64,000 nucleotides of DNA from Phallusia mammillata (taxonomy: Eukaryota): contig OZ281497.1 of assembly GCA_965637545.1 (NCBI GenBank), positions 19,096,001 through 19,160,000 of the forward strand, given 5' to 3'. The translations under genes and the position numbers were made by a program. The notes under the pieces are model-generated. The model saw only the letters and a list, made by a program, of their open reading frames with translations, was not told the origin of the DNA and did no database searches. This document shows positions 1-63,157 of this stretch, in pieces. The stretch's first letter is position 1. Every line of letters starts with the position of its first letter.

Positions 1-134
1 CAAACGGTATTGTTACGGTTTAGTAAACACGACTTTGAAAAAACGTTTTGCTGTGGTTGTAATATAACGTGTTAGTAACCTCATCGTTCATACGTAACGC
101 CATAAACGTTCTTGTTACTTTTTTGGACAAAATA

Positions 135-600
135 ATAAAAACGTTTTGTATTTACGTTATTATGTGGTTGCAGTTATCTGTTTTAAAAACGTTATTTTAG
201 TTACGTATTAAACCGTACGTTTCTGTAACATAACCAAATAACGAGATAAAAACGTTTTGTATTTACGTTTTTAAGTAGTAGCATTTATCTGTTTTAAAAA
301 CGTTTTTTTCAGTTACGTATTAAACCGTACGTTTCTGTAACATAACCAAATAACGATATAAAAACGTTTTGTATTTACGTTTTTAAGTAGTAGCATTTAT
401 CTGTTTTGAAAACGTTTTTTTCAGTTACGTATTAAACCGTACGTTTCTGTAACATAACTAAATAACAAGATAAAAACGTTTTGTATTTACGTTTTTAAGT
501 AGTAGCATTTATCTGTTTTAAAAACGTTTTTTTCAGTTACGTATTAAACCGTACGTTTCTGTAACATAACTAAATAACAAGATAAAAACGTGTTGTATAT
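135..600 (+). repeat. Tandem array, ~112-bp unit, ~4.2 near-identical copies
   Basis: The unit anchor ACGTTTTGTATTTACG recurs at 141, 252, 364 and 476, with a variant ACGTGTTG at 588 (periods 111, 112, 112, 112). The core TTACGTATTAAACCGTACGTTTCTGTAACATAAC is identical in four copies. Confidence 0.95.
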
Positions 601-1345
601 AAACTGTTGGTAAAACGTCATGAAAATAATGTATCAAAGCGAACATACTTGTAACCTTTCTAAGTTACGAATACACAAAACGAAATGTTTTGACAATATT
701 CACAACGTTGTTTAAAGGTCACCAAATGATTTTTTTGTGTGTTGATGAAAATGTTACACCAAGGTTCGGTGGTGGGCTATTAAGTTAACCGAAAAAGTCA
801 TAAAATGATTGATAAAAAACGTTCTAAAAACAACGTTTTGGTGTGGTTGTAATCCGAGGTGTGGGTAACGTCATGGGATATACGGTACGATATAAATGTT
901 TTTGTTGGATTTTTTTGGACGATATAAATATTTTTGTCTAAAACGTTTTAACTAACTGTTTTTGTGTTGTTACATATAGTGGTTTTAAAAACGCTTATTA
1001 AGATACGAATGAAATCAAACGTTCCTATCATCTTACCACACAACGACAAGCGTAAAGAAACGAATCAAATCCAACGTTCTTGCAACCGTACCACTCAACA
1101 GAACAAACACGTGCCTCTTAAACGCTTTTTTTGTGGCTACAATTGATTGGTTGTAGAATTAATTAACGTAATTTAGTCATGAATCAAATACATCGCTAAC
1201 CTTAAACCGGTATTTGCCGAAAAAAAGTTTTAGCATTCATGTTTTTATAATGCTAAACACATTACTCAAAAATCAATGACACAATTAATAAAGAGAAAAA
1301 AGGTATGCGTAAACAAACTTTAAAACGTATGCATTGCGGTGCGGC

Positions 1346-1353
1346 TATAAATA
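1346..1353 (+). promoter_or_regulatory. Possible TATA box (TATAAATA) of the DUF4806-like gene
   Basis: Motif lies ~480 bp upstream of the ATG. An acceptor (TTTGCAG) directly before ATG 1831 implies a non-coding first exon and a 5'UTR intron. Motif match only. Confidence 0.3.
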
Positions 1354-1830
1354 GTAACCACAAAATAATGATGCAACCGCTTATGAATTGGGAACCACCA
1401 AGCTAAAATCAGGGGCGGCATGGTTCATGGCTGTAAGTGCGGCCGAACGTGCGTGCAGTCTTGTCGTGTGCGAGTGTGTTACAAGTTTAAGCTGTGCATC
1501 AAAGTATTTCCGAAAAGGTAATAAATGGTACAGTATAGAAATTAAAACAGAGTCAGTGATTAACTACTATGATTTGCAATACTCAGAAAGTCATATCTAT
1601 TAACAGTTTGCGGGAGCTAGCTTTTTGTTGAAAAAGTGTAATGTTTCAATTAGTTTTGCAGAATGCTAAACAATGTTTGTTTTAAATGACCCAAAGTAAA
1701 TTTTGTTTAATGTAAGAGAAAATTTTCAATTTGTAATAGCATGGAAACCCTAATGTAGAGTTGTATTCTAGGCCTTTTTTTTATCAGCAAAATTGTATTT
1801 TTATATTTTTCATTAAATTTTGTTTTGCAG

Positions 1831-3452
1831 ATGTCGTTTGCCATAGTGGAATTTATAAAGGAGCAAAGTGTCGAACTTGTACATTTAACTTGGATAAAAA
1901 AAAGCGAATCTGTAAGTATCTTTTAATATTTTTGTCTTTTTGGTATTCTGATGGTAAATCAGTCATGTTTATATTTTCCAGACAACACAGTGTTTCTGGC
2001 CCAAACTAAATGCTAGACAGAAGGCAAAGAAAGGTGAAATTCCAGATCCTAAAACATGGGATACTTTTGAAATACGGATTTTCTCAACTACAGGTAAATT
2101 GTGCTTTTATGACAATGAACAGTTTTTTACTGCTACTTTATGCTTTAGATGATTTTGAAATTGCACTGAAACGGGTAGCCAGGGCAGAATTAACCTCGAA
2201 TGTGGAAAGTGATGATGAAGTGCCAGATGTTCGTTTAAGAAAAAAAGTGTGTCGATACTCTCCACCAGGTAACATTCTGCACTAATGTAGTACAAACCAC
2301 ACCTGTTTTCTAAAACATTTTCTTTCCAGTTGATAGATACAAACACATAGAAGCAAACAAGGAAAAAAACTTGAGTACATCTTCAAATATAAGTTCAAAC
2401 AAAGACCAACAAAGCAAATCCAGCGAAAGTGCTCTTCACAACATAAATGGTATGCATGTGCACGTTTACTTGGGTGGATCCTTGTCAGATTATTGTAATT
2501 TTTTTGCAGCAAAATTAAACATGTTATTGGAATTACAAACAAACCTCACAAACATAGTTAAACAAAGCATACCCAAAAATGATGATGGTAAAGTCCTGGA
2601 ATTTGACATGCTGGAAAGGCCGCTTGAATCCATACTGGAATTGAAGGATTTGGATAACAAACTTCATGACAAGGAGTTATGCAAATCACTGGTATAGTAC
2701 ATGTGTCTTGTTTACATATAAACTGCCCTGAATGCAAATCAATTTATCACATAGGTCAAATATTTAACCAATATTGGAGGGACCAGTGTTGGAGACAATG
2801 TGCGGCGTATGATGAAGGCTGTTGGTTCGTATGGTTTATGGTCACAGTATAGCTATAAAGGAAGAAAAGGAAAGGAGGCTTTTTGTGGAACTGTTATGTG
2901 TAAAGTTATTTTAAGTAAGTATTTTGCCGGCGAAAAAATGTGAAACTGTTTGCAAAACTGAAAATATGCATTTGTGATTTTTAGAAAGTGCACTACGTTC
3001 TAACAAAGATCTCAAAGCCAGTGCAGTTGAGGTGGAGATAAAAGAATTTTTGAAGCATGCACCATACAAGCCTGGCGGAATTAACTATAAGGTACACAGA
3101 TATTTTTTTATTTTTCACCCTTGATTTAAACTGCTCGAGTGAGTTACATTAAACTTTCACAGCTGATAGATACAGTTTGTAAATCAATTAGTTGCTTTCA
3201 ATTTGCCCACTCCCCCCTTTAGTTCCCTTGCCATCACCAAAATGTAGCTTTATACACTAACGTTGTATGTTGTGCAATATGTGCTAATATACCCTTCTAG
3301 TTTATCAACACAATTACTAGTTATTGATTTTGTAAGCTTAAACCATTTTTGTGTTTTAGAATAGACAGGCTGACATGAACATCTCAAGTTCAAGTTCTTC
3401 TGGCACACCCACTGTCCTTCTTTTTTCGTCAGACGAAGAAAATGATGTTTAA
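1831..3452 (+). CDS. Transposon-associated DUF4806-like protein, 344 aa, 7 exons, intact
   Basis: Exons 1831-1911, 1982-2093, 2149-2268, 2330-2691, 2755-2914, 2985-3091 and 3360-3452 (1035 nt), all GT-AG and phase-compatible. N-terminus MSFAIVEF..SVELVHLTW..CFWP..PDPKTW. C-terminal PLESILELKDLDNKL..YLTNIGG..VRRMM..YSYKGRKGKEAF..IKEFLKHAP matches my recollection of the DUF4806 pattern. Confidence 0.8.
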
Positions 3453-3889
3453 TTTCAAATCGATGCAGCCTTGATTTCGTTTGTTTGTATTAAAATACTT
3501 TTTAAAAAAATGGTGTGCGTACAACGTTGCAGTAATCGTTATAGAAACGTCAATGGGAGTCCACACAATGTCGTTCGCACAACTCATTTGAATAACGTGA
3601 GGAAAACGATACGAGTAACGTTAAGACAACCTAAACTTAAACCGCCAGTTGACGTGACAATCTTCGTTTTAACAACCGTTAAATTAACGTAACAAAAACG
3701 GCAAACTGAAACGTTTTGTAATCGTTGTTTTAAACGTTATTATAGCGAAAAAACGTACGTTTGTTTAAACGTAATTAAAACGAAAATGGGAGTCCACACT
3801 TTATGGTTTTTATAACGTCACAGCAAACGTTTTTGGTAGTTTTAAAAAGCCATTACGCAACGTTGCCACGACGTTAAATTGTTTGCTGG

Positions 3890-4176
3890 GGTGGTACTAT
3901 ACCGCATGTGATCGCATGTTACCGCATCATACCAGATGGGATTCCGTTTAGAATACTGCATTGTGTGTGAAATGTGATAAGACAAGTTAGGCCAGATTCT
4001 GGTATTACTTCAATTACAAACCCTTACCCAACCCGACTAGCTTTAGCCGTCAGCGCTTTCAAAAGTCCGCAAAATTATAATTTTCGTAAAAGCATATTCA
4101 AGTCCTTCACAACTTCCTGTTGTGTGATAACATGCAGTCACATGCGGTAACATGCGGTATTTATTAACCTACCACC
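3890..4176. mobile_element. Small degenerate inverted-repeat element (MITE-like)
   Basis: Left end GGTGGTA..ATACCGCATGTGATCGCATGTTACCGCAT (3890-3927). Right end ATGCAGTCACATGCGGTAACATGCGGTAT..TACCACC (4132-4176) is its approximate reverse complement. No clear TSD. Confidence 0.45.
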
Positions 4177-4362
4177 GATTTTTAAGCTTGTTTCTGGTCA
4201 AACCGAAATATACTTTGCATTTCCTTCTATAAGTCTAATGAGAAGTTGCAAGACTAATAAATTAATGTGTTGTTTCGGTGTAAAGATCAGGTAGGCCTAC
4301 AACACAATAAGTAGTACAAATTTAAAATTTAAATGACCCTTTTCTAATTTCAATTTCTAAAG

Positions 4363-4680
4363 CAGGGGTGTGCAACCTTTGTCATTGTGGGGCCAAATAC
4401 AATTACCATGATCAGATCGCGGGCCGCACCACAAGTAGATTTTACTTTGTTGCATACCAAATATGCGTATATTGAGTTGACAAGTAAAATTCGCACTTAT
4501 CTCTAGCCGAATTATTGCCAGGTCGCAGAAAAATATCACCGGGCGCATAAATCTGCTCAAAAATATAAGAGAATTAGAATCGTTTGCCAGTAAATTAGAA
4601 ATTTCCAGCTTTTCCGTGGGCCGCACACCTTTAATCAACGGACCGCGTTTGGCCCGCGGGCCGCAGGTTGCACATCCCTG
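4363..4680. mobile_element. hAT/Charlie-type MITE, 318 bp
   Basis: TIRs CAGGGGTGTGCAACC / GGTTGCACATCCCTG. Perfect 8-bp TSD TTCTAAAG (4355-4362, 4681-4688). GGGCCGC subterminal motifs. Confidence 0.92.
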
Positions 4681-4699
4681 TTCTAAAGTAGGCCTATGC

Positions 4700-5042
4700 C
4701 AGTGTTTCTTAACCTTTTTAGCGCTCGTACCCTTTGAGCTTTCATAAAATTTTCTCGTACCCCCGGTCTAAAATAGCCGACGGAAGTTAATAAAATCGTA
4801 ATAATTGGAATCAACATAATTTTAATAATAGCTATTTATAACTTGCGTGTTGGATGCATGCATTAAAACAGTATTGTAAGTAGTACAAAATCAACCCGTT
4901 TTAGACATATAACAAAGTAACTTGTTACGCATTCTTTACAAATATGCCTAAATACGGTATGATTTCACCCTGCATGTCGTACCCCCTGTTTTAGTGCTTC
5001 GTAACCCCAAGGGGTACACGTACCCCTGGTTAAGAACCCCTG
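4700..5042. mobile_element. hAT-type MITE, 343 bp
   Basis: TIRs CAGTGTTTCTTAACC / GGTTAAGAACCCCTG. Perfect 8-bp TSD GCCTATGC (4692-4699, 5043-5050). Repeated CGTACCC subterminal motifs. Confidence 0.92.
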
Positions 5043-5204
5043 GCCTATGCCCTCCGGCGCAGGTTTTGCTCGTATCCTCGAGCGGCGGCGTTAAAGTGTG
5101 TACATTCTGGTCTACGACTCTACGTCAACGCAACCTGTGCAACTTTTGATTAGGGTTGTGCATAGTGCTTTTTGCAATTAAATGAACCGGATTTAACCAA
5201 GAAC

Positions 5205-6901
5205 ATGTGGTGGTTGGTAGCTGGATATGCTGCTGTTACTTCTGTCTTGTTTCAAATTATTTATGATGCGCAACCTACACCTTTCATCGACGAAATTTTT
5301 CATGTGCCTCAAGCTCAACAATTTTGCAACAAAAACTTCGCAGAGGTATGTTTTTCGTGTAAAGCTTTGGTAATCGAATTTTCACCTGTTTAAAACTAGC
5401 TTACAAGCTAAAATTTGTAAATGTGTTTTGTTAGTTAACATATTTTAATGGATTTTTCAATTGCTTTTTAGTGGGATCCAAAAATTACAACCCTCCCTGG
5501 AATGTATATTGGATCTTTCATTGTATCCCTCATTCCATCTCTGTTTGTGGGAAATGCTTGTAGTGTTTGGGCATTACGATTTCTGAATATAGTCTACAAC
5601 ACTCTTGTATTGGTTTTATCATACAATATTTTATTGGAACTGTGGAAGTCAACCAACGAATCCAAGGTTTGTATTGTTTTCATGATTGGCTTACCTTTTT
5701 GTTTTGGTAGTAAGTCTGTGCCTAGTTTGTCCATTTAAAATTTCTGATTCATGATCAAATAATGCATTTATCAATACCAACAGGAGAAGAAAGGTAAAGA
5801 AGAAGATGTGGACCTCAAATTATGTGCTTTGGTTATTGGATTGTTTCCACTGCTTTACTTCTACTCATTCTTGTACTACACTGAGCCTGGATCAACATTT
5901 CTTATCCTTGCTGCTTACTTGTTTTGCCTAAAGGGGCAACATAGAGTTGCCAGTATCTTATCAGCACTATCTATCATATTTCGTCAAACAAATGTGGTGT
6001 GGACAATCTTTATGGCTGGGACCATTGTGGCTAAGCATATTGATGATTTATCAGAAATGGAAAAAATCAAAACATCTGCAGAAGTAAAGGACAAATTTGC
6101 CAGGTATGTTTGTCAGTTTAATGATTTTAGTAGTTGTTTTTTCATAACAAATATATATTTAGATTTCTTGCCAAAGTTATGCTGTTTGTTGTTCGATATC
6201 TTCTGGTATTGGAGCACTTGTTGACCATAGGATTGTTAATATGGCCATATGCAGTTGTGGTCATATGTTTTGGACTATTTGTTTATGTCAACAATGGGGT
6301 TGCTGTTGGTGATAAGGACAGTCACAAAGCTGTGTTGCACTTGGCTCAAATTCTGTATTTCTCTGGGTTTATGCTATTTTTCTCATCTCCGGTGCTGATA
6401 ACAATGGATAAGATCAAGCGATTTGTTGCTGCAGTGCAAAAGCACAAAGCTTTATGCATAACATCGGCTGTGGCCAGTTTGTATGTCTTGGCTTTTCACA
6501 CTTACGAACATCCCTACATGCTTGCTGACAACCGTCACTATGTGTTTTATTTGTGGCGCTGGATTTTGGGAAGGTTTGTGTTCAGGTACTGCGTAATACC
6601 TGTATACATTTATGCATTTTGGAGTATTAATGACAGCATCTCTATTACAAATGCTACCTTGTTAAAAACAGTGCTTGGTGCATGCATCGTGGCAGTGTTG
6701 GCAATGCATAGACTGATTGAATTTCGCTATTTTATCTTGCCATACATTCTTATCAGGTTGCATTTAAAGGAACAGACAAGAAAGACTTTGCTGCTAGAAA
6801 TTTTGTTGCATGTTTGTGTCAATGCCTTTACTATTATGGTTTTCCTTCAAAAGACATTTGCATGGCCTGATCTTTCTGAACCACAGCGAATAATTTGGTA
6901 A
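5205..6901 (+). CDS. ALG10: Dol-P-Glc:Glc2Man9GlcNAc2-PP-Dol alpha-1,2-glucosyltransferase, 464 aa, 4 exons
   Basis: Exons 5205-5345, 5472-5666, 5784-6103 and 6163-6901 (1395 nt, in frame). ALG10/DIE2 motifs PFIDEIFHVPQAQQFC, WDPKITTLPG, FLYYTEPGSTF, FRQTNVVW, VGDKDSH, HPYMLADNRHYVFYLW, IEFRYFILPY and QRIIW. Confidence 0.96.
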
Positions 6902-24524: not shown

Positions 24525-25640
24525 TTATCCTATAACCCCTTCTCGTGTCGTGCTTGAACTGGTGGCATTCGCATTCGCGGTGTAAGCACAGTTCATTACG
24601 TAAGACTGGGTGTCGTTGTTTAGCGCTGGAACCGTATCGTTGTCCCAAATGTTTTGTGCGTAGGTTGGGCTAAAGTCGCCAACGACGGTTGTCTCCAGCG
24701 GCATCGTGTTGATGATTTGGAAATTGTTTTTGTCACCCTGGGTAGTAGTACCATCGTTCGTTACAGTAAGGCCTGTTTCGGGTGTTCCGTACGGATTTGT
24801 GTAGCTGCAATTTCGTGAGAAATTATCCGTTCTCCCGTACTGCATATGTGCTCCGGGAAAAGTTTGCTGCACCATCGAGCCAGCGTATGTTGACGTCTCG
24901 GAGCCAGCACCGCCACTTTCGCCTTGTTTCGCAATTCTCCAATAAGCGTCTGCTTCCATTTGATGAATCCTGGCTCGTAGCTTGTGATTTTCACTTTCCA
25001 CAAGTCGGTTTCGCTCCAAAAGCTCTGCGATCTGTCTTTCCAGGCTCAGCATCTTGGCCTTTTTCCGATCACGTGCAGCCTGTGCCGATTCCCGATTCTT
25101 TAACTTTTTGCGCAACTCTTTGTCAGTGACGTGTTCATAGCTCTTTTTCGGTGTCGGAGGCTGTTGTAGTTGACATTGCTGCTGGAGAGTTTCATTTGAA
25201 AGTTCGTTGCACCCTTTGGTAAAAAATCCAACATCCTGACTGTTATGGGGCGGTGTAATATCGAATGATCCACAATTGAAACCAGGCATTGTTACATCGC
25301 TGTTTGGTTTGCAATCTCCGCCCATTTGCTGGTTCACCAATGCAGCATACTGCTCATACGCGTTTCTTGAAGTCTCGTCTTCTTTGGCAAAAGTCGGAAA
25401 GGGCGTAAGTTGTTGATTATCGCTGATTTCCATTTTGTAATTTTGCTGCATCTCTACAGGATTGGAGTTAACGGGAGAGGAAGAAGAACTTGAAGAGGAG
25501 CTGTAGTTTGACGTAACTGTGGATGACTTGGAAGGGGATCTTTGAGACGATGAGGAAGTAGAAGATCTTCTGAAGGCTCCGCTACTGACAGATTCAAAGC
25601 TTGATGTGGCATAATCGTTTAGTTGCCCAGAAACCAACAT
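24525..25640 (-). CDS. XBP1-like bZIP transcription factor, 371 aa, CDS without introns
   Basis: Single ORF. Basic region ELRKKLKNRESAQAARDRKKAKM closely resembles XBP1 (LRRKLKNRVAAQTARDRKKARM) and is followed by a leucine zipper. Ser-rich and Gln-rich N-terminus. Orthology versus paralogy is uncertain, so no symbol is given. Confidence 0.88.
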   Translation of the reverse strand: MLVSGQLNDYATSSFESVSSGAFRRSSTSSSSQRSPSKSSTVTSNYSSSSSSSSSPVNSNPVEMQQNYKMEISDNQQLTPFPTFAKEDETSRNAYEQYAALVNQQMGGDCKPNSDVTMPGFNCGSFDITPPHNSQDVGFFTKGCNELSNETLQQQCQLQQPPTPKKSYEHVTDKELRKKLKNRESAQAARDRKKAKMLSLERQIAELLERNRLVESENHKLRARIHQMEADAYWRIAKQGESGGAGSETSTYAGSMVQQTFPGAHMQYGRTDNFSRNCSYTNPYGTPETGLTVTNDGTTTQGDKNNFQIINTMPLETTVVGDFSPTYAQNIWDNDTVPALNNDTQSYVMNCAYTANANATSSSTTREGVIG

Positions 25641-27634: not shown

Positions 27635-30130
27635 TCATATGTAGTCCCGAAAGAACCTGTGCTGACAAATAGCGTTAGCAACAAAATCATCCAAAATAGT
27701 TATAAAGAGCATCAGACAATCAGAACTTTTAATTTCACAAATTTAAAAAGGCATCGTCAGTTTAAGTCTTATTTAGATAAACAATGAAAATCATTGATGC
27801 ATTTAACTCTTTCGTTTAAGACTTCTTAAAAGAGCTTCTCTTTACTACCACCTGCCGACAAACAAATGATGTTTCACAACAAATATTGTAAACTGTGGAA
27901 AAAATAACGTGCATATTAAGGAATGTTGCCCTGTCAAAAATCACATTGATCCATCGAGACACTTTTTTTCATTACTATACTAAGTAATGTCGCATGACAA
28001 TCGAATTTAATTACTAACGCTATCATCTATTCCATATAATACATTTTCCTTTTACTTTTTTATATTAATCATTGTGTCTTGATGTTGGTTACCATAGTAT
28101 AAGGTGTTATAGTCGCTTTTAATTTTCGAAATATATACGTTTGAGAAAAACTTCATTCACAGAGTGACAACTTGTCGTGTCACTAGAATTGCTCTCAAGT
28201 TCACGACCTTTCTTACGTGTCAGCATCTGTCCTCTCACGAAGCGCATCTCGAATGCATCACAAACAAACACGACGATTATCGATTAAGCTTACACTTCGA
28301 GACGGTATGTCGGCAACCTTTGAGTTGTTACCTTTGACTTTGACCCAAATATGTGAGTATTAATTTTGCCGTGTGTTCTGCGATAATGCGATTAGGTCAA
28401 ACAACAAAATTTCCTCGTGTTTGGTTCTAGCTTCAAAGCCTTTAAACGTGAACTATATTTAGCGATTGGTGGAAATGTAATTATAATTGGTGTGCCGTTG
28501 GGTTTAACAATATGACATTGTATGGGAATGGGACAGTATAGTAGTAACTTTACTTAAATACGATATGTAAGAGTTACAGTTGTATATTCGTCATATGGAC
28601 ACGCCCTGGTCGTTTGAAGTAACAGACAAAAGCCAGGCGCCTTTCTCCCATTTAGGTACTGCACTAAACTATTCGTAGTGATCTATCAGTATCAAAAAGC
28701 CGTCCTTTATTCGAGCTATACAGCGTTTTATAGTAGGTATGACATAATGGCTTGGACTGTAATCACTGGGATCGCATTTCTAACCATGCGTTATAGAGAG
28801 GTGGCCCATTCTCCTGCAATCAAGCCTTGATACAGAAACATAGAACAGGGTCAGAATTGCAGATTTAGCAACGTTTTATAATGTGATCGTAGAAGGTAAT
28901 ATACTTCGTATGCTGTGTAAATTATGTAGCAAATGCTGTAGACAGAACCTGATAAAGAAAATGGTACTGAATATTCTTTAGGTTTTAAGCCTAAAAAACG
29001 TTGTATGGCTTGTTTTGAAACATAAAAGCAATAGTGTTTTTAAAAGCAAAACAATAAAACACAAAATTAAGTCTACTCTACATGCGGGTATATGCGTAAT
29101 TGCCTGAAAAGAAAGTTAAAAAATGTGTTTCTGCTTGCATCTGGAACACGTTTGCCAACGGGACTAGAATCAAGTCCATTACCTAAATTTTTAAAATGTA
29201 AGGTATTTTAAGTCGTCTTTCGCAAAAAAAGCTTTATGAACGGATTTCAACAACAAACCATTGTAAAAAGTGTAAATGACTATTTAATCTAATGTAATCT
29301 TTTAACTAATGTACGTATATATACAACATACAAAGAATCTGAAGGTCAGTGACAGAAATTAATTGGCGAAATCATAAAGACGACACCCCAAAACGTGATT
29401 TCTTTAGAAACACGAAGTGAACGGTGCGAGACGACAGTTGGAGACATAAAGTCATTTAGAATTTTCTAATCGCTGAACTTCAACTATTTTCCTTTGACAC
29501 CGGTATCGGTGCTCACCCAATTCATTTGAATACGCGAGCAAACTAGGCAAGATTAACGCAAAGACAATGCAGCAAATGAGGGCACGCGAGCCATAAGCAA
29601 ACAAGCAAAGAATAGAGTTGGGTGCGCTCCTTTACAATGAGTGGAACTGCATAGAGGGAGGTTTCGATGGCAACGAAGCGTCGTTCCTGTTTCTCGGCCC
29701 CCTTGTCTGCCTTTTTCTTCGCCGTGCTCACTGCAAGTCTCCATTGTGCAGAACAACTTGATGCTGCAGCGCGCCTACTCGAACTTGCATGCGCTAGAAC
29801 GTTGATTAAACGGCGCAGCTTTAATGGCATACCAGCGGGTTTACCAGTGAGAGTCTTGTGGCAGGATGGGAAAATAGTAACTTATCATAATTGAACAGTA
29901 CAAAGTAGTTTTGCAGAAAATGAAAGCATGTTAAGCCTTTTTTTCGGGATATACTTGCAGGTAACGCAAAACATGTGAAAATGCGCACTTAAAAGCAATT
30001 ATGGGGCAACAGCTGTTTTGTTGGTCGAGGTAGATGTTAAGCAAGTCAATGCAATAATTCATTTAATCCGATATTATTTTCTTAGCATTAAGTGGCGGTT
30101 CAACAACATATGACCACTTTGCTAGTTGTA

Positions 30131-33100
30131 ATGGGTTTTCCTTTGCACCTTTTTGATTCTGGTCTTGACGATTCCTATCTGTGCTGGATATGCAAGCAAG
30201 TTCTCGACAATCCTCTTGCCGTTCCGTGCGGACATGTTTTTTGTTCCTCTTGCGTGGAGCCTTGGGTTACCAAATCCAACTCATGTCCTTGTGATTGTGA
30301 CGGTAAAGTTGCCATCTCCGATCTCAACCAAGTACAGCCTCTAGACACACTCATAGGAAAACTGACCAGCAAGTGCTCAAACCATGACAAGGGTTGTCAG
30401 TTTTCCGGACAACTGCGTGACGCTAAATTGCACTTGAAAGTTTGTCCTTTCGCAACTCCAATCACTGAACCGGTATCAATTGGCCAAAGTTCAGTATCTT
30501 GTGCTTCTGAGCAAACTATGGACGATATTGAAACTATAGACAGTTTGAAAAAGCGTGCAAAAGAACTTAAGGAAGAGATCCAATCCCTTAAAAGCCAACT
30601 TGAAGAACAAAACAGCGCCAAAGTTTATAGTTCAGGGAATACCAAGTACGCAGAGGATATGGTGAAAGAAGATTCAATACATCTAAGCAAAGAGGAATAT
30701 AACATTTTGCAAGTAAGTAAATCGCATGGATTGGTGGTTTATTAGCTATATTGCATGGTTATGTAAAATATTCGGAGTTTTTTTCAAAATGGTTACGAAT
30801 AGGAATGCCATGGTGACATTCAAAAGTTACATAAAGTTATCAATTTTTTTGCGAATTTTATTTTTCGTTTGTGTGGGGATCGCGTATAGTGGTGTAGTGT
30901 ACTGGATCCTTGCGGGAATGATTTATGGTCACCGTGCAGGTCCCGAAACCGCGTTGCACGTATGTGGGGGTATATAAAACTTATCACGCACATCTCAAAC
31001 TGTCCCCTGAAGCGACGGGCCTGCCACTCTCCATGCACCTCGCTACACTCTTTCTTCCCTTGATTACCGAGTCAAAGGTTATTTCGCACAAATCGGGTTG
31101 TCAGAAAAATCGCCCTTCCCATGAAGCTCGGGTGCATTTTTGCGATCTTTATCTGATTGCAACATGCTCATTAGAGCCAGTCGATTTTATCCAAGTCCAC
31201 GGACAGTTAAAGACCGTTGGCCGACGCCGCGTTTATTGACTTGCGCAATCTTCGGCCATTGGCGTGTGGCCATCGACTTCAAAGTGATTTGCGTTTGTTC
31301 GTGATCAGCAGCTAGATAACGCAATCGACCTCATTTGGAGCAATTCTGTACAGCGCCGCACGGCCAACAAACAACGTTAAAAAGGCATCCAGTGTGCTAT
31401 CACATCTACTTGCTAACCCGTTGCTGACTTTTGCACAAGGCGCCAGCATTACCAGCAGTTCAGGATTCGTCTTGCCACCGGCTTATTTTCGCAACTGCGC
31501 AAATTAATCCTTCAAGCGGGTTTAGCGTCCTGATAAGCCAATGAAAATATTTCAAGTCACATAGTTATCGTTTGGAGTTGATCCTGGAGGCGCTGGTCAA
31601 TCCGCCGATCCGGAAACTTGGTCGGATCCTAAACTGGCTTAACCCAATTTGTCGCAACGCTCGCACTGCGGGGTTTTATGACACCACATGACAATCGCCT
31701 TTGACCCTGTATTGTATTTTGCTCCACCGTCACGTGATGTATGATCAGCACGCGCCAGCGCTTAACAGTTATGCCTTTCAAAGTCAAAATGTCAAGCATT
31801 TACAACATGTGAAAAGTGTAACTCTCTCATGAAGGACGTAAATTTAACGTATGTCCTTTATAACAATAAACTGATGAAAAACCAAAATGGTTTGTTGTGG
31901 AGTAAGCATAAAGTTGTATTGTGTTTTGGAATACAGACGCTAATGCTTCGCACAAAACCTTAAGCAAATTTAACGCCGACCGCAAATTGGAATCGCTGAC
32001 AAGTTTACAACTCATGGCGTCAGAGGGCTTTTTACTGTAAAATGGTGCAAATTATATGTATTTTACGTAAACAGTGCTTGACGTTTCGCCTGGCACCGGA
32101 AATATCAAAACTCCCGAAATCACAACAGTTTTTCACAGTTTGAATAGTTCATTGAACTTGGTCTCATTTGCCTTCGGTAGACACTGGGCGCATAGTAAAA
32201 GCTTGCGTTGACGCGTGCAAGACGGTACGACGCCCAGTTTGACAACTCAAAAGCGTGATTGACGGCCCACTGGATCTTCTGCACAAATATCGTGCCTTGT
32301 GTGCGAAAGCGAACTTCTTCTCTGCCGCGTGTTGGTGTTGTTTGCCCTGAAAACATATTGTCCCGTGCGGGCGGGCCTTACAACTTGCGGTTGGTGTATT
32401 TAAGGTGCGATAATCCATCTTATCAGACCTCAATCGCCTTGCCTGGTGATTTACCAATAAAATATTGAATCAGCATAGAATTTCGACACCTGGAGATTTT
32501 TTTGTGGTTCGTTTATGTTCGTAAGTTTGACATTTGCAGCAACAACTTTCAGCCTTCGTGTTGTGGTTAGTATAGTCGAAGTGCAGGCTTTAGAGGGAGG
32601 CCACACGCAGTTTGAAAAACAAACCATCGTGATCTGTCTAGATTTGTTTTGAAAACGTCAGAAATTTCCACTTGAGCTCCTGTGTGCAATGATCTTTGCC
32701 CTCGAGATCGTTGACACCAAGGATAGATGGCCTGTCTCGTTAACTGTAGCAACTTGGCTGTCTATTTTGTGTTGAACAGGAGCGGATTTCGAAGGTTTTT
32801 GTTGCTAAGCCGAAAGCAGGTCCTGTGGGTTTGGTTAAATACACGTTCGGAAGGTCAAGTGGCGTGTTTGGAATGCTTGAGGATTTCGAATTTAAGAAAA
32901 AACAAAGTTGCTTTAAACACCAATTTACAAAAGGCAGCACATTCCGAAATTGCGTACTCCTGCTATTGGAAACCTAAACGCCTCTTACAGGCATTCGTAG
33001 GATTTCACTCATCCATCACATCAGGACAAGCGGCTCACTATTGGGTTTAGTATCAATATCGGGTTTAGCATAAACAACGGGCAAGCGCCAATTGAACAGA

Positions 33101-60100: not shown

Positions 60101-63100
60101 GTGCGGGAATTTTGTTTTCGCGAGTTTCTCTTCTTGTGGCCTGGAACAGAAACCGGGTCACAAGCTCCTACGTCACTCCGCTTGTCAATTAAGATAATCC
60201 ATCGTGCTGCAATTAATTATAACTCGGGCGTGCGTACAAGGTGAAGGCCACGGTTGTGCCAAGGGATGCCTAAGTGAACCGAAATGCAAGGATCAATCGA
60301 TTAGGCCGTTGTTTTAACCCCGTAACTCAGTGACGTAACCTTACTCCTTTATTCGGTAACAGTGTATGGTGTAATGCGCGGCGCGGCAGTCTCGCGTATG
60401 CTCTCATTCGTATAAATATTTTTCGTGTGTGTAAATACGCTGAGGCGCGCAAGGCTTTGAAGTGCGCGAGCGCCCCGCCGCTTTGATATGTTCTGCAATG
60501 TTTATCATAGCACGGCGAATCCGCACGACGAATTTCCGTAAGTTTGAAGGCCAGTCTCCGGGATCGCTTCCTAATTAACGTCCGTTTTGCCCGTGCGCCT
60601 TCTTCCCTGTGCGCTGTTCACTTTGTGCTCCGTGATAAAAGGCATGTTTTAATTCTAGCTGTCATGCGAAGCGATGGGCACGACGGATAGCGGAACATCA
60701 CACAGCTCCACCACTGCCTGCAGCCAAAACGAAAAAGACAGCGGCTTTGGCCAAACAACGGACGGCACTGTACAGGTACAGAAATAACAATTTCACTAAA
60801 CTGTGTGTTTACTCTCGCTCGAAATCACTTGTATTTTATCACGATCATTTTCCAAACAGGGATTTTATCGCAAAATCGAGTAAAAGGGGAAATTCAGTGT
60901 CTTCGGACGCATTTAGGGCAACTGTGTCTTGTATTTTCGAACGCGTGAAAACTGGCACTTTCTGTTTCGGAGAGAGTGTGTAACAAGCCAAATCCGAACA
61001 CTTTCTATTTCTGAAGTGCAACATGCCCCTGTGTAGTGCCCTCGTGTAAAACAGAGTGTGTCGGGTGGTCAAACACGCAACACTCGACCAGCATCCGGCT
61101 TAAGACGTCACGCCTCCCTATTCCCTTCGTGCAGTGCGAGCGTTCTGGTCATGCCTTGTGGAATGCACACAATAACCAGTGTGTTGTCAGCACTATAATC
61201 CGCCCTCAGTTCGTTTGCTCATCCGATGCGCCATGTCCTGTTGCGAGCTGTAGTTGTTTGACGATTTTATACCAAAAGCCAGTCTGTTTGGCAGTGGCGA
61301 TAGCCTTTTCTTTGCTCTTAATAAACAAATTTTTGTTGTTACCCACAGAGCACAGTCAGCAAATCAACAAACGATAACCGACGTTTTGGAACAACTTCTA
61401 GCGGCGGAAGTTCGTCACACTCTGCTGCCCGCGAATTCACCTACGTACCAGTCCAGGTAAGATTTTAGTCACATGGAATTGATAACCATGAAACTAAACA
61501 AGTTACAATTAGACAAAACTTTAAACAACATGATCATTATTAACAGAAATACCACCAGAAGAAACGCCCCGCTCAACACAAAGCTGTGGCCGGCGATTCT
61601 GGCGACTCGGCAAAAGGTTCGATGGAACGTTCGATTCCAGAAGAGCGTGAAAGTGACCTGAGCCGTTTAAACCAGGCCATCGAGAGCTTGGAAGTTAATC
61701 AAACCAACACTATCCCCACTCCGAACAACCCATTTGATGGTGAAGACTGCGATAACGTCAGTCCCTGGGTCAAAATCGCTATGCAGGACTACCAAGAGAA
61801 AATCCGCCAGTACGAGAATACTGGTGACGCTAGAGTGATCCACCCAGCATTGCCGGCTGATGCTGATGGCTTGCTGTCCAACGCCCGATCTGAGAGCGTT
61901 GCCACAGACAACACATCCTCTGCGTACAGCACCGGGGATAGTTTCCGCAGTTCAAGCTCCGCAAGTGGCCAACGATTGAGCAGCGAACTTCAAACGCCGC
62001 CTCTCTCGCCCGAAAAGCAAATCTACGACAGCGTTTCACCCTACTACAACGTGTGTACCAACGAACTCCCTCCATACACAGGAAAACATCACGGAGTCAC
62101 GATGTCTTACTACGTCAGCAGCGATGGGAACAGTGACGGCGAAGGACCTGCATGTTACTTGACCCATGACGATGACAGCGGTTCCGAAGGTTTTGCCGAT
62201 GCCGGTTTGGAGTTCAGCCAAATGTTCACGTCAGCCCTTGGTCAGCATCCCAAACTACAGCACAGCAAATCGGCGCCCGTGCCAGTTCTGAATCACCCAG
62301 CGTTTGCAAACAACTTTATGTCTCAATCCGTAACAGCATCCACCAAGCAACTGTGCAAGGCAGCGGCTCACGTTGCCCAGACACGGAGAAGCACTGCCTC
62401 TAGTGGCGAGATTCCATCCGACTGCACCGATAAATCTAAATCGTCGTCGCGTACAAGGACCGGCTCGCAGAGGGAAAATGTGAGCACCGACTCGATGAGC
62501 GGACAAACAGTGATTACCCATACCAACGAAAACTGCCAACAAGTCGAAATGCCCCACCCTAAACCGTTCCCTCGACACAAGGCGCGCAGATCGTCGGAAC
62601 AGATCAAACAGCCTATACTTCGACCCGCAGCTCCTAACAGGTCTCAGTCCTACACGGAAGGCCAAGTCGCTTGCAAAACTGCAATGGACGAGTCCCTAAC
62701 CGGATCAAACGGTGACGTGAGTTCGGAATGGAAGGTACGAGTTCGCAACGACGGCACTCGTTACATTACGAAGCGACCCGTCCGAGAGCGCTTGCTTAAG
62801 GAGCGAGAGCAACGCTTGCTGGCCGAACGTTGCGGCATTACTACAGACGACGACGCTGCAACAGAACTCAAGCTTGGTCGCCACTGGACCCGCGACGAAC
62901 GCAAACGTCACATGCGCATCGCTCGCGAAAAGCGTCGACGGAAGGATTTCATGCAGCGATGCCGCTTGGAGGCGCTAAACGAAAACGCTCCCGCTGACGG
63001 TGAAATCGTTGAACTTAGCCACAAGAAAATGACCCGCAGAAAGCACAAACGTATGTTGCTGGACAACTTCGTAACCGTGCAAGAAATTCTGGCCCATGGC

Positions 63101-63157
63101 GACAGAACAACCAGTGCAAATAAAGTGAACCCCTTATTAAGCGTCACCTACATTTGA
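30131..63157 (+). CDS. PDZRN3/4: PDZRN3/PDZRN4-like RING-PDZ E3 ubiquitin ligase (~1098 aa from the 10 exons found)
   Basis: Exons 30131-30712 (MGFPLHLFD.., RING C-WIC..CGHVFC..C, TRAF-type Zn finger), 51420-51697 (VNGEDLSTASHEAAAEAFK), 51794-51935, 53869-53970 (QDKLGI), 56737-56799 (ESIAAR..EGDQIVK), 57962-58060, 59386-59580, 60659-60775 (EKDSG), 61349-61456 and 61547-63157 (WKVRVRNDGTRYITKRPVR, ELSHKKM, LLSVTYI PDZ-binding end). All GT-AG and phase-compatible. Confidence 0.93.

What the first reader, a model, noticed from the sequence alone, without database searches (positions are those of the whole stretch)
1..3890. CMC/EnSpm-like element carrying an intact, spliced DUF4806 (BEN-like) gene but no visible transposase
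Seen: repeat-rich flanks on both sides of one 7-exon gene with no stops or frameshifts, and a CCCAGCAAAC-type terminus at 3890. Position 1 already looks subterminal, so the left end may be close and leave no room for a transposase. Knowledge: plant CACTA elements use a second protein (TnpA) that binds subterminal repeats, and DUF4806 has, as I recall, been reported to adopt a BEN-type DNA-binding fold. Inference: this is either a non-autonomous element retaining only its accessory DNA-binding gene (a helper or regulator) or a gene being domesticated. An intact, multi-intron ORF implies youth or selection.
Basis: partly seen in the sequence, partly recalled or inferred. Interest (0 to 1): 0.7.

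Follow-up and report, generated by a model that had tools for sequence, protein, structure and literature searches.

The report
Transposase-less CMC transposon keeping its BEN gene
This is a young, 4-kb cut-and-paste transposon that has lost its transposase but still carries and expresses the family's second gene. That gene encodes a Tudor-like plus BEN/DUF4806 protein and proves to be the standard partner gene of this transposase in many animals.

Summary
The element is 4,024 bp, from 134 bp upstream of the window to window 3890. It has 11-nt inverted termini (CCCAGCTAACA / CCCAGCAAACA), 2-bp target-site duplications and AACGTT-packed subterminal regions. There are 4 copies 99.8% alike and 3 older, broken ones.

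It has no room for a transposase. It holds one gene: a 5'UTR exon plus 8 coding exons, 324 aa. Contigs from three studies show every intron spliced out.

Longer relatives in the same genome (6.3-8.6 kb, same termini) carry a CMC-type DDE transposase (D, D, CxxC, HxxxH, E) followed by a paralogue of this gene. In 43 of 57 metagenome contigs that encode the transposase, the same gene lies just downstream on the same strand.

The closest full-length homologue reaches the DUF4806 threshold. Its model folds as a Tudor-like barrel, a long helix and a BEN domain (Z 10.3 to BEND6).

Best reading: an internal-deletion derivative that keeps only the family's accessory DNA-binding gene and is moved in trans. 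Domestication and host-gene capture are rejected.

The scan holds two first-reader notes on similar elements elsewhere in this genome. The spliced protein itself could not be sent to any search or fold tool.

The parts
1..3890 (+). Body of the 4,024-bp non-autonomous element. Its first 134 bp, including the left TIR CCCAGCTAACA and the left 'gt' TSD, lie just upstream of the window at G000:C4:19095865-19096000.
   Evidence: Homology among four copies at different loci (99.75-99.85%) starts and stops exactly at these points.
1..1196 (.). Left subterminal region, dense in AACGTT/AAACGTTT palindromic motifs.
   Evidence: AACGTT occurs 19 times on the left, 6 on the right and once in the centre, about 52-fold over the window background. 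This region is 91-99% identical to the left end of the transposase-bearing elements L019/L020.
135..598 (.). Tandem array of a 112-bp unit, 4.2 copies, 96% matches.
   Evidence: Tandem Repeats Finder and the direct-repeat families. The copy number of this unit differs in L019/L020.
1346..1353 (+). TATAAATA box upstream of the transcript start (inferred promoter).
   Evidence: Read directly from the sequence. The earliest RNA contig begins at 1429.
1390..1417 (+). Conserved leader block (GGGAACCACCAAGCTAAAATCAGGGGCG).
   Evidence: The same block lies about 100 bp upstream of the transposase ATG in L021/L022.
1429..1517 (+). 5' untranslated exon, donor GT at 1518.
   Evidence: A contig of run X14 joins 1517 to 1831 with GT..AG ends.
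1831..1911 (+). Coding exon 1, with the ATG at 1831 directly after the acceptor AG. Start of the Tudor-like N-terminal domain.
   Evidence: Joint 1911/1982 in runs X12 and X14; model; 44-64% identical to paralogues.
1982..2093 (+). Coding exon 2, the rest of the Tudor-like barrel.
   Evidence: Joints in three runs; 54% identical to P0004.
2149..2268 (+). Coding exon 3, an acidic linker.
   Evidence: Joints in three runs.
2330..2449 (+). Coding exon 4, a Ser/Asn-rich linker predicted to be disordered in the homologue.
   Evidence: Joints in three runs; pLDDT below 50 in the equivalent part of P0004.
2510..2691 (+). Coding exon 5, the long helix and the start of the BEN-like domain.
   Evidence: Intron 4 (2450-2509) is spliced in three runs; helix 138-168 in the P0004 model.
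2755..2914 (+). Coding exon 6, the core of the DUF4806/BEN-like domain (IGG..G..VRR...LW..YS.KGRKGK.AF).
   Evidence: Pfam DUF4806 14.3 bits, E 0.054, profile positions 33-77. A profile of this exon finds 1,013 proteins at E <= 0.001.
2985..3091 (+). Coding exon 7, the end of the BEN-like domain.
   Evidence: Joints; 60% identical to P0004.
3360..3452 (+). Coding exon 8, a Ser-rich acidic tail ending in the stop TAA.
   Evidence: Joint 3091/3360 in three runs.
3476..3890 (.). Right subterminal region with AACGTT motifs, ending in the right TIR TGTTTGCTGGG (3880-3890). The 2-bp TSD 'gt' follows at 3891-3892.
   Evidence: The terminal 13 nt match the right end of L020.

Best explanation
What it is. 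The element is an internal-deletion, non-autonomous member of a CMC (CACTA/EnSpm-Mirage-Chapaev) DNA-transposon family. The host genome is probably the ascidian Phallusia or a near relative.

Full-length family members. They are 6.3-8.6 kb and hold, between CCCAGC...GCTGGG termini and AACGTT-rich subterminal regions, two genes. One is an intronless DDE transposase of about 650-710 aa. The other, downstream, is an intron-containing gene (ORF2) for a protein with a Tudor-like barrel, a disordered linker, a long helix and a BEN/DUF4806 domain.

This 4-kb element. It lacks the transposase. The family's promoter/leader block is joined through a 313-nt intron to ORF2, which is transcribed, fully spliced and intact (324 aa).

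Shown here: the ends, the TSDs, the copies, the splicing, the two-gene layout of relatives here and in other animals, the CMC catalytic signature, and the BEN fold of the closest full-length homologue.

Inferred mechanism:
- The element is cut and pasted in trans by a transposase of the L019/L020 subfamily. Its left 400 bp (91-92%) and both terminal 13-14 nt match that subfamily. One intact 712-aa copy of that transposase exists.
- The ORF2 protein is the family's counterpart of maize TnpA. It would be a dimeric, sequence-specific DNA binder that occupies the palindromic AACGTT motifs in both subterminal regions and brings the ends to the transposase, or regulates the element.
- Keeping ORF2 lets the short element supply its own end-binding factor and parasitise only the transposase.
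For: Element, ends and copies:
- Boundaries, TIR and 2-bp TSD.
- Four copies 99.8% alike, each with 3-6 private changes, plus three older copies that are 1.6-2.4% diverged and broken.
- No copy of this gene lineage (>=98% at exon 6) lies in an element with a transposase.

Relatives and transposase:
- L020, L021, L022, L023 and L027 have the same termini, a transposase ORF and an ORF2 paralogue (42-64% identical, exon by exon).
- The transposase has 1,818 homologues, 40-50% identical, in Ciona, an octocoral, mussels, crustaceans, a hagfish and teleosts. Some carry PF02992 or PF13960.
- D200, D278, C297xxC300, H494xxxH498 and E518 are invariant or nearly so. This matches the CMC signature described in PMC12730594.
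- The L019 transposase has a 712-aa open frame with no stops.

Two-gene layout outside this genome:
- Of 57 metagenome contigs with at least 1 kb downstream of the transposase, 43 have the ORF2 N-terminal domain downstream on the same strand (median gap 573 bp).
- Of 15 contigs with at least 4.5 kb downstream, 12 also have the BEN part.
- No same-strand ORF2 match lies upstream of the transposase.

Expression and selection:
- All 7 coding introns and the 5'UTR intron are spliced at GT..AG sites in contigs from three studies.
- 11 synonymous against 12 non-synonymous changes separate the two usable older copies from the young consensus, where 21% synonymous is expected (omega about 0.28, P = 0.003).

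Protein:
- DUF4806 scores 25.3, 26.7 and 37.2 bits in the full-length homologues P0004, P0006 and P0011.
- The P0004 model has mean pLDDT 81.7.
- The ten best structural matches are all BEN-DNA structures: BEND6 Z 10.3 (rmsd 1.8 A over 82 residues), Insv 8.5, Bsg25A 8.1, NACC1 7.5, BANP 7.4, BEND3 6.7. Unrelated rows sit near Z 3.

Motif:
- AACGTT occurs 25-44 times in the subterminal regions and 0-1 times in the centre, in all five subfamilies examined.
Against: - No transposition event, DNA binding or protein interaction was observed. The role of ORF2 is inferred from fold, position and analogy.
- The spliced 324-aa protein itself could not be scanned or folded. DUF4806 and BEN rest on exon 6 (14.3 bits, below the cut-off) and on a homologue that is 54-69% identical in the conserved exons.
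- No autonomous parent with the same ORF2 lineage was found. The right subterminal 400 bp are only about 60% like L020, so the element is a mosaic and its mobilising transposase is a guess.
- The termini are CCC..GGG, not the CA..TG/CACTA usual for CMC.
- Pfam hits of the local transposases are below threshold (DUF4218 at 14.5-23.2 bits against a cut-off of 27).
- AACGTT is not enriched in the metagenome relatives examined, so the motif-protein link has no cross-species support.
- The selection test rests on 23 substitutions and ignores transition bias.
Confidence: 0.78

Rival explanations
1. The retained ORF2 protein acts as a repressor or competitor, not a helper. By occupying the subterminal motifs of all family members without supplying transposase, the short element would damp transposition. 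This would resemble the suppressor function of TnpA or a P-element KP-type repressor.
For: The element makes a spliced mRNA for a probable DNA binder and no transposase. The AACGTT motif is shared by all subfamilies, so one protein could reach many elements. BEN proteins solved with DNA are mostly transcriptional repressors or insulators (titles; established knowledge).
Against: The short element has itself amplified recently to at least 4 near-identical copies. That is not expected if its product shuts the family down. The gene sits next to the transposase across animal phyla, which fits a factor needed for transposition. Nothing tested here separates helper from repressor.
Confidence: 0.15
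2. The gene is a host gene captured by a transposon (a Pack-type transduplicate) and has no role in the element.
For: Non-autonomous CACTA elements that carry host gene pieces are well known in plants (PMC6379663, listed). The local ORF2 has introns like a host gene.
Against: Paralogues occupy the same place, downstream of the transposase, in at least five diverged subfamilies here. The same holds in 43 of 57 transposase contigs from other sources. All copies of this lineage lie inside elements. The gene is complete with its own start, stop and promoter, not a fragment.
Confidence: 0.03
3. The locus is a domesticated, immobile BEN/DUF4806 host gene that merely sits among old transposon debris.
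For: The open reading frame is intact and expressed. There are signs of purifying selection. DUF4806 genes annotated as ordinary genes exist in fishes and flies.
Against: Four copies at unrelated loci are 99.8% identical over the entire 4,024 bp, non-coding ends included. They have perfect termini and different 2-bp TSDs. Post-insertion changes in the young copies look neutral (3 non-synonymous, 1 synonymous).
Confidence: 0.03

Closest known systems
Maize En/Spm (CACTA) and its internal-deletion derivatives that still encode TnpA (from established knowledge of En/Spm, not tested here)
   Same: Both are two-protein cut-and-paste elements. A DDE transposase works with a second protein, and multiple short motifs fill both subterminal regions. 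Deletion derivatives lose the transposase function and are moved in trans. A shared 5' leader lies upstream of the transposase in full-length elements and of the accessory gene here.
   Different: The accessory protein is unrelated in sequence to TnpA (no Pfam Transposase_24 hit). It is a Tudor-like plus BEN/DUF4806 protein. The termini are CCCAGC, not CACTA, and the TSD is 2 bp, not 3. The host is an animal. Alternative splicing over the transposase is not shown.
Animal CMC-EnSpm elements, such as the zebrafish non-autonomous EnSpm-N49 (PMC13189230), and the Chapaev/Mirage groups (PMC4079192, PMC4455052)
   Same: The transposase has the CMC signature D..D..CxxC..HxxxH..E. The TSD is 2 bp, as for the zebrafish element. 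Homologous transposases are widespread in animals.
   Different: The zebrafish and Chapaev elements begin with CAC, this family with CCC. The published non-autonomous elements I could read carry no gene, whereas this one keeps an expressed accessory gene. No paper in the searched library links BEN/DUF4806 to CMC elements.
BEN-domain DNA-binding proteins (Insv, Elba/Bsg25A, BEND3, BEND6, BANP, NACC1, LIN-14) and the DUF4806 subtype (PMC10789644; bioRxiv 10.1101/2023.12.06.570431; PMC10080584)
   Same: The fold of the C-terminal domain in the homologue model matches (Z 10.3-5.8). The DUF4806 profile hits. A palindromic, CG-containing candidate site exists, like the palindromic sites of several BEN proteins (established knowledge).
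   Different: There is no sequence-level match to solved BEN chains or to Pfam BEN. The protein is encoded inside a mobile element, with an N-terminal Tudor-like barrel. DNA binding is untested.
PIF/Harbinger and Nuwa elements, which have a transposase plus a separate Myb/SANT DNA-binding protein (PMC12730594)
   Same: The logic is the same: a separate, element-encoded DNA-binding protein accompanies the DDE transposase.
   Different: The transposase superfamily, the DNA-binding fold and the TSD are all different.

Membership tests
CMC (CACTA/EnSpm-Mirage-Chapaev) DNA transposons | [quoted passage not shown] | tested here: met
   This element has no transposase. The feature is met in relatives that share its termini. 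D200, D278, C297xxC300, H494xxxH498 and E518 are conserved in at least 85% of 122 sequences and invariant in an alignment of 28; both L022 and L019 keep them.
CMC (CACTA/EnSpm-Mirage-Chapaev) DNA transposons | Short TSD of 2-5 bp | tested here: met
   2-bp TSDs of varied sequence in 10 of 11 elements.
CMC (CACTA/EnSpm-Mirage-Chapaev) DNA transposons | Termini 5'-CA..TG-3' (CACTA or CAC) | tested here: not met
   The termini are CCCAGC[T/A]AACA ... TGTT[A/T]GCTGGG in all subfamilies. The paper says 'in most cases', so this is a variant feature, not an exclusion.
CMC (CACTA/EnSpm-Mirage-Chapaev) DNA transposons | Pfam Transposase_21 (PF02992) or DUF4218 (PF13960) in the transposase | tested here: inconclusive
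   The local transposase ORFs hit DUF4218 at 14.5-23.2 bits, below the 27-bit cut-off, at the same relative position in four ORFs. A minority of the 40-50% identical homologues carry precomputed PF02992 or PF13960.
Non-autonomous deletion derivative of a DNA transposon | Same termini as autonomous relatives, no transposase, several copies with TSDs | tested here: met
DUF4806 (PF16064) | Profile score at or above the 25-bit gathering cut-off | tested here: inconclusive
   Of this protein only single exons could be scanned. Exon 6 gives 14.3 bits, E 0.054, and a six-frame genome scan found nothing. The full-length homologues P0004, P0006 and P0011 score 25.3, 26.7 and 37.2 bits.
BEN domain fold | Five-helix globular domain that superposes on solved BEN-DNA structures (criterion in PMC10789644) | tested here: met
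   Tested on the homologue P0004, not on this protein. BEND6 Z 10.3 with rmsd 1.8 A over 82 of 91 residues. Insv, Bsg25A, NACC1, BANP and BEND3 follow at Z 8.5-5.8. The ten best rows are all BEN.
BEN domain fold | Sequence-specific DNA binding | not testable with these tools
   The only support is a candidate site, the palindrome AACGTT enriched about 52-fold in the subterminal regions.
Plant TnpA (En/Spm accessory protein) | Sequence homology to TnpA (Pfam Transposase_24) | tested here: not met
   No such hit in the exons or in full-length homologues. The resemblance is functional and positional only.
Tudor / SH3-like barrel (N-terminal domain) | Five-stranded barrel that superposes on solved Tudor domains | tested here: inconclusive
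   Model of the paralogue L022:4798-5040 with pLDDT 88. The best matches are the ARID4B Tudor (Z 5.1), JMJD2C Tudor (Z 4.4, 25% identity) and RBBP1 double Tudor (Z 3.6). These Z values are low.
Pack-type transduplicated host gene | Cargo derived from a host gene outside the element family | tested here: not met
   The gene is the regular neighbour of the transposase here and elsewhere. No copy of this lineage lies outside the elements.

The most novel reading that the evidence does not exclude
The Tudor-like plus BEN (DUF4806) protein would be the obligatory, end-binding second subunit of a pan-metazoan clade of CMC transposons. It would also be the source of the 'orphan' DUF4806/BEN genes scattered through fish, fly, mollusc and cnidarian genomes. 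ORF2-only elements like this one would be a selected, semi-autonomous lifestyle. They keep the DNA-binding subunit under purifying selection (omega about 0.3) and parasitise a transposase that survives here as a single intact copy.
Probability: 0.35. Interest if true: 0.7.

Novelty: new variant of a known kind. Interest (0 to 1): 0.55.

Why it matters
DUF4806 is a widespread animal domain of unknown function. It was recently recognised as a BEN subtype, and it is expanded in Hydra and on zebrafish chromosome 4. Here a DUF4806-type gene is shown to be the conserved downstream neighbour of a CMC transposase, both in this genome and in many environmental animal contigs. That gives the domain a biological context and a directly testable function: binding the AACGTT subterminal motifs. 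It also explains why these genes come in bursts and are often mis-annotated. One example is the relative P0011, which its source names 'VRK3'.

The 4-kb element is small, young and expressed, with defined ends and a candidate partner transposase. It is a convenient system for asking what the second protein of animal CMC elements does. Ascidian embryos can be electroporated, which would make such tests practical.

For genome annotation, this locus is a transposon gene, not a host gene.

Tried and rejected
- A six-frame scan of the genome with PF16064 found nothing, because the domain is split by introns.
- Pfam on single exons gave only a sub-threshold hit.
- A word search with the closest homologue P0004 did not return this protein, so no protein id exists for it.
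- The joined spliced protein was therefore never sent to a search, family or fold tool. It was only translated and codon-counted inside scripts. DUF4806 and BEN rest on exon 6 and on homologues.
- A profile search against PDB sequences found no BEN chain.
- AACGTT enrichment was looked for in metagenome relatives and not found.
- Rfam found nothing in the window.
- No paper links BEN/DUF4806 with CMC/EnSpm, or SAMD3 with BEN.
- Rejected readings: domestication, host-gene capture, and an autonomous element with the transposase just upstream.
Full report
WHERE AND WHAT

The window is G000:C4:19096001-19160000. I read the 10 kb upstream and three other loci that match window 1-1200 at 100%. I then aligned the four 20-kb contexts. 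Similarity of 99.75-99.85% begins 134 bp before window position 1 and ends exactly at window 3890. Outside those points the flanks are unrelated.

The element is therefore 4,024 bp. Its ends are CCCAGCTAACA on the left, just outside the window, and TGTTTGCTGGG at 3880-3890 on the right. This is an 11-nt inverted repeat with one mismatch. The two bases next to each end are duplicated (gt, aa, ta, tt). Including older copies and longer relatives, 10 of 11 elements show a 2-bp duplication of varied sequence.

A transposase immediately upstream is excluded.

COPIES AND AGE

Searches with the two ends find seven copies of the short element.

- Four are full-length and differ from one another at 15 sites plus a 2-bp insertion in one copy. 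Each copy has 3-6 private changes, so the pattern is star-like and points to a recent burst.
- Three are older, at 1.6-2.4% divergence.
  - One carries a 2-kb insertion.
  - One carries a 1-kb insertion.
  - One is truncated at the 5' end.
  - All three also have stops or frameshifts.

SUBTERMINAL DNA

A 112-bp unit is repeated 4.2 times at window 135-598. The palindrome AACGTT, often extended to AAAACGTTTT, occurs 25 times in the 1.74 kb of subterminal DNA. It occurs once in the 2.28-kb centre and 0.27 times per kb in the other 60 kb of the window, about a 52-fold enrichment. The same core motif fills the subterminal regions of four other subfamilies, at 29-44 copies against 0 in their centres.

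THE GENE

A model with 8 coding exons gives an open 324-codon frame with GT..AG introns.

Contigs from runs of three different studies, whose run type is only guessed to be RNA, carry the joined form. They show every one of the 7 coding introns removed at exactly these sites. One contig also joins a 5' untranslated exon (1429-1517) to the ATG exon at 1831. A TATAAATA box lies at 1346-1353.

Intron 4 is 60 nt long, in frame and free of stops.

The joined sequence was not sent to any search or fold tool. It was used only inside scripts to check the frame and count codon changes.

WHAT THE PROTEIN IS

Alone, exon 6 matches Pfam DUF4806 at 14.3 bits, below the cut-off of 25.

A profile of exon 6 and seven paralogous exons from this genome (A1) finds 1,013 proteins at E <= 0.001 among 1.84 billion representatives. 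The closest full-length one, P0004 (321 aa), has the same layout and is 54-69% identical in exons 2, 6 and 7.

P0004, P0006 and P0011 reach the DUF4806 cut-off at 25.3, 26.7 and 37.2 bits.

An AlphaFold model of P0004 with 50 homologues has mean pLDDT 81.7. It shows four parts:

- a beta barrel at residues 1-80
- a disordered linker
- a long helix at 138-168
- a helical domain at 180-290

The ten best structural matches are all BEN domains solved with DNA: BEND6 Z 10.3 (rmsd 1.8 A over 82 residues), Insv 8.5, Bsg25A 8.1, NACC1 7.5, BANP 7.4, BEND3 6.7-5.8. Unrelated chains sit near Z 3. This agrees with the published statement that DUF4806 is a BEN subtype (bioRxiv 10.1101/2023.12.06.570431; PMC10789644).

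The N-terminal barrel, modelled separately from a paralogue (pLDDT 88), is closest to Tudor domains. The scores are low (ARID4B Z 5.1, JMJD2C Z 4.4). I call it Tudor-like with reserve.

WHERE THE TRANSPOSASE IS

Loci whose left ends are 81-99% identical to this element extend to 6.3-8.6 kb between the same termini. They hold long ORFs of 600-712 aa and, beside them, exons 42-64% identical to exons 1, 2, 6 and 7 of this gene. In L022 the second gene starts with MSFAIVEF, as here, 51 bp after the transposase stop.

The transposase ORFs give repeated sub-threshold hits to DUF4218, a CACTA-transposase domain, at the same relative position.

The L022 protein has 1,818 homologues at 40-50% identity over its full length. 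They come from Ciona, an octocoral, mussels, crabs, crayfish, a hagfish and teleosts. Some carry Transposase_21 or DUF4218.

Alignments show conserved D200, D278, C297xxC300, H494xxxH498 and E518. This is the signature given for the CMC group (PMC12730594). A 2-bp TSD has a precedent in a zebrafish CMC-EnSpm element (PMC13189230). The CCC termini depart from the usual CA..TG.

THE TWO-GENE LAYOUT IS GENERAL

I fetched 80 metagenome contigs that encode relatives of the transposase and searched their six-frame translations with a profile of the ORF2 family (A2).

- Of 57 contigs with at least 1 kb downstream of the transposase, 43 have the N-terminal domain of ORF2 downstream on the same strand, at a median gap of 573 bp.
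- Of 15 contigs with at least 4.5 kb downstream, 12 also have the BEN part, in colinear order.
- No same-strand ORF2 match lies upstream of the transposase.

Many contigs may come from the same few host animals, so these are not 43 independent observations, but they are independent of this genome.

Named relatives of ORF2 come from the same kinds of animals as the transposase homologues: teleosts, Mytilus, Procambarus, a sea spider and Phallusia.

One of them, a Phallusia mammillata protein that its source names 'inactive VRK3', is nearly identical to an exon in locus L026 of this genome. The genome is therefore probably Phallusia or a close relative.

ORIGIN AND MOBILISATION (INFERENCE)

A 28-nt leader block at window 1390-1417 recurs about 100 bp upstream of the transposase ATG in L021/L022. 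The simplest history is an internal deletion that removed the transposase and left the family's promoter and leader in front of ORF2.

No autonomous element with this ORF2 lineage was found. At exon 6, all matches of 98% or more lie in the seven short copies, and the next best are 43-62%.

The element is a mosaic:

- Its left 400 bp are 91-92% identical to L019/L020.
- Its right 400 bp are only about 60% identical to them.
- Both terminal 13-14 nt match that subfamily.

That subfamily has one intact transposase ORF (712 aa, no stops) and one broken copy. It is the best candidate for the trans-acting enzyme, but this is not shown.

SELECTION

Among the four young copies, the coding changes are 3 non-synonymous and 1 synonymous, as expected for neutral decay after insertion.

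Two older copies were usable. Between them and the young consensus, 11 of 23 independent coding changes are synonymous, where 21% is expected (omega about 0.28, binomial P = 0.003). This suggests the gene was under constraint while the lineage was already transposase-less. The sample is small and transition bias is ignored.

MECHANISM PROPOSED

Shown:

- a mobile-element structure with recent copies
- an expressed, intact ORF2
- conserved linkage of ORF2 to a CMC transposase
- a BEN fold in the closest full-length homologue
- palindromic motif arrays at both ends

Inferred: the ORF2 protein dimerises, binds the AACGTT arrays and helps assemble or regulate the transposition complex, as TnpA does for maize En/Spm. 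The short element supplies this protein itself and borrows the transposase.

The main rival is that ORF2 from such elements acts chiefly as a repressor. Host-gene capture and domestication are rejected on the evidence above.

NOVELTY

Non-autonomous derivatives and two-protein DNA transposons are known kinds. What I could not find in the searchable literature is any link between BEN/DUF4806 and CMC elements. Curated repeat libraries, which I could not consult, may already hold such two-ORF entries.

Two first-reader notes of this scan describe a similar transposase-less element and a two-gene element elsewhere in this genome. I treat them as leads only.

LIMITS

- All runs laid were contigs, so expression level, strand and transcript ends are not measured.

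Noticed in passing
window 3899-4160, 4358-4685, 4691-5051: Three short units bounded by inverted repeats (36-nt arms at 81%, 21-nt arms at 86%, 24-nt arms at 83%) lie directly to the right of the element. They look like MITEs, so this is a transposon-rich intergenic stretch.
   Followed up: no
window 5274-6760 (+): An ALG10/DIE2-type glycosyltransferase gene (PF04922, 187 bits) starts about 1.4 kb downstream of the element. The element is intergenic, not inside this gene.
   Followed up: partly
window 24528-25640 (-), 30092-30742 (+), 61586-63154 (+): Three long ORFs: a bZIP transcription factor, a RING-finger protein, and a 523-aa ORF with no Pfam match.
   Followed up: partly
window 1-30000 against 30001-64000: G+C rises from 31-42% in the first 30 kb to 43-49% in the rest of the window.
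   Followed up: no
L019:2794-4929 (-), L020:2349-4401 (-): In the subfamily closest to this element the transposase ORF is inverted relative to ORF2 and to the left end. L021, L022, L023 and the metagenome loci (apart from a second, inverted copy on one contig, L070) have both genes on one strand.
   Followed up: partly
P0011 (Phallusia mammillata CAB3267653.1), P0002 (Labeo rohita KAI2646470.1): Proteins of this ORF2/DUF4806 family are named 'inactive serine/threonine-protein kinase VRK3' and 'von Willebrand factor A domain-containing protein 3A' by their sources. These are probably annotation errors caused by transposon genes. P0011 nearly matches L026:5279-5407 of this genome, which points to Phallusia as the source organism.
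   Followed up: partly
L024:3431-5230 (-), L029:1304-3193 (+): hAT-type transposases with a Spin-doc zinc finger and a hAT dimerisation domain are nested in or next to related CMC elements. L024 also holds long ORFs of 429-581 aa that were not scanned and may belong to a retroelement.
   Followed up: no
P0001 (413 aa): One library protein contains three tandem copies of the DUF4806 core. It is either a repeat-domain protein or a gene model fused across tandem elements.
   Followed up: no
whole window: CpG is not depleted (about 51 CG per kb at roughly 44% G+C), so there is no sign of heavy germline CpG methylation in this region.
   Followed up: no
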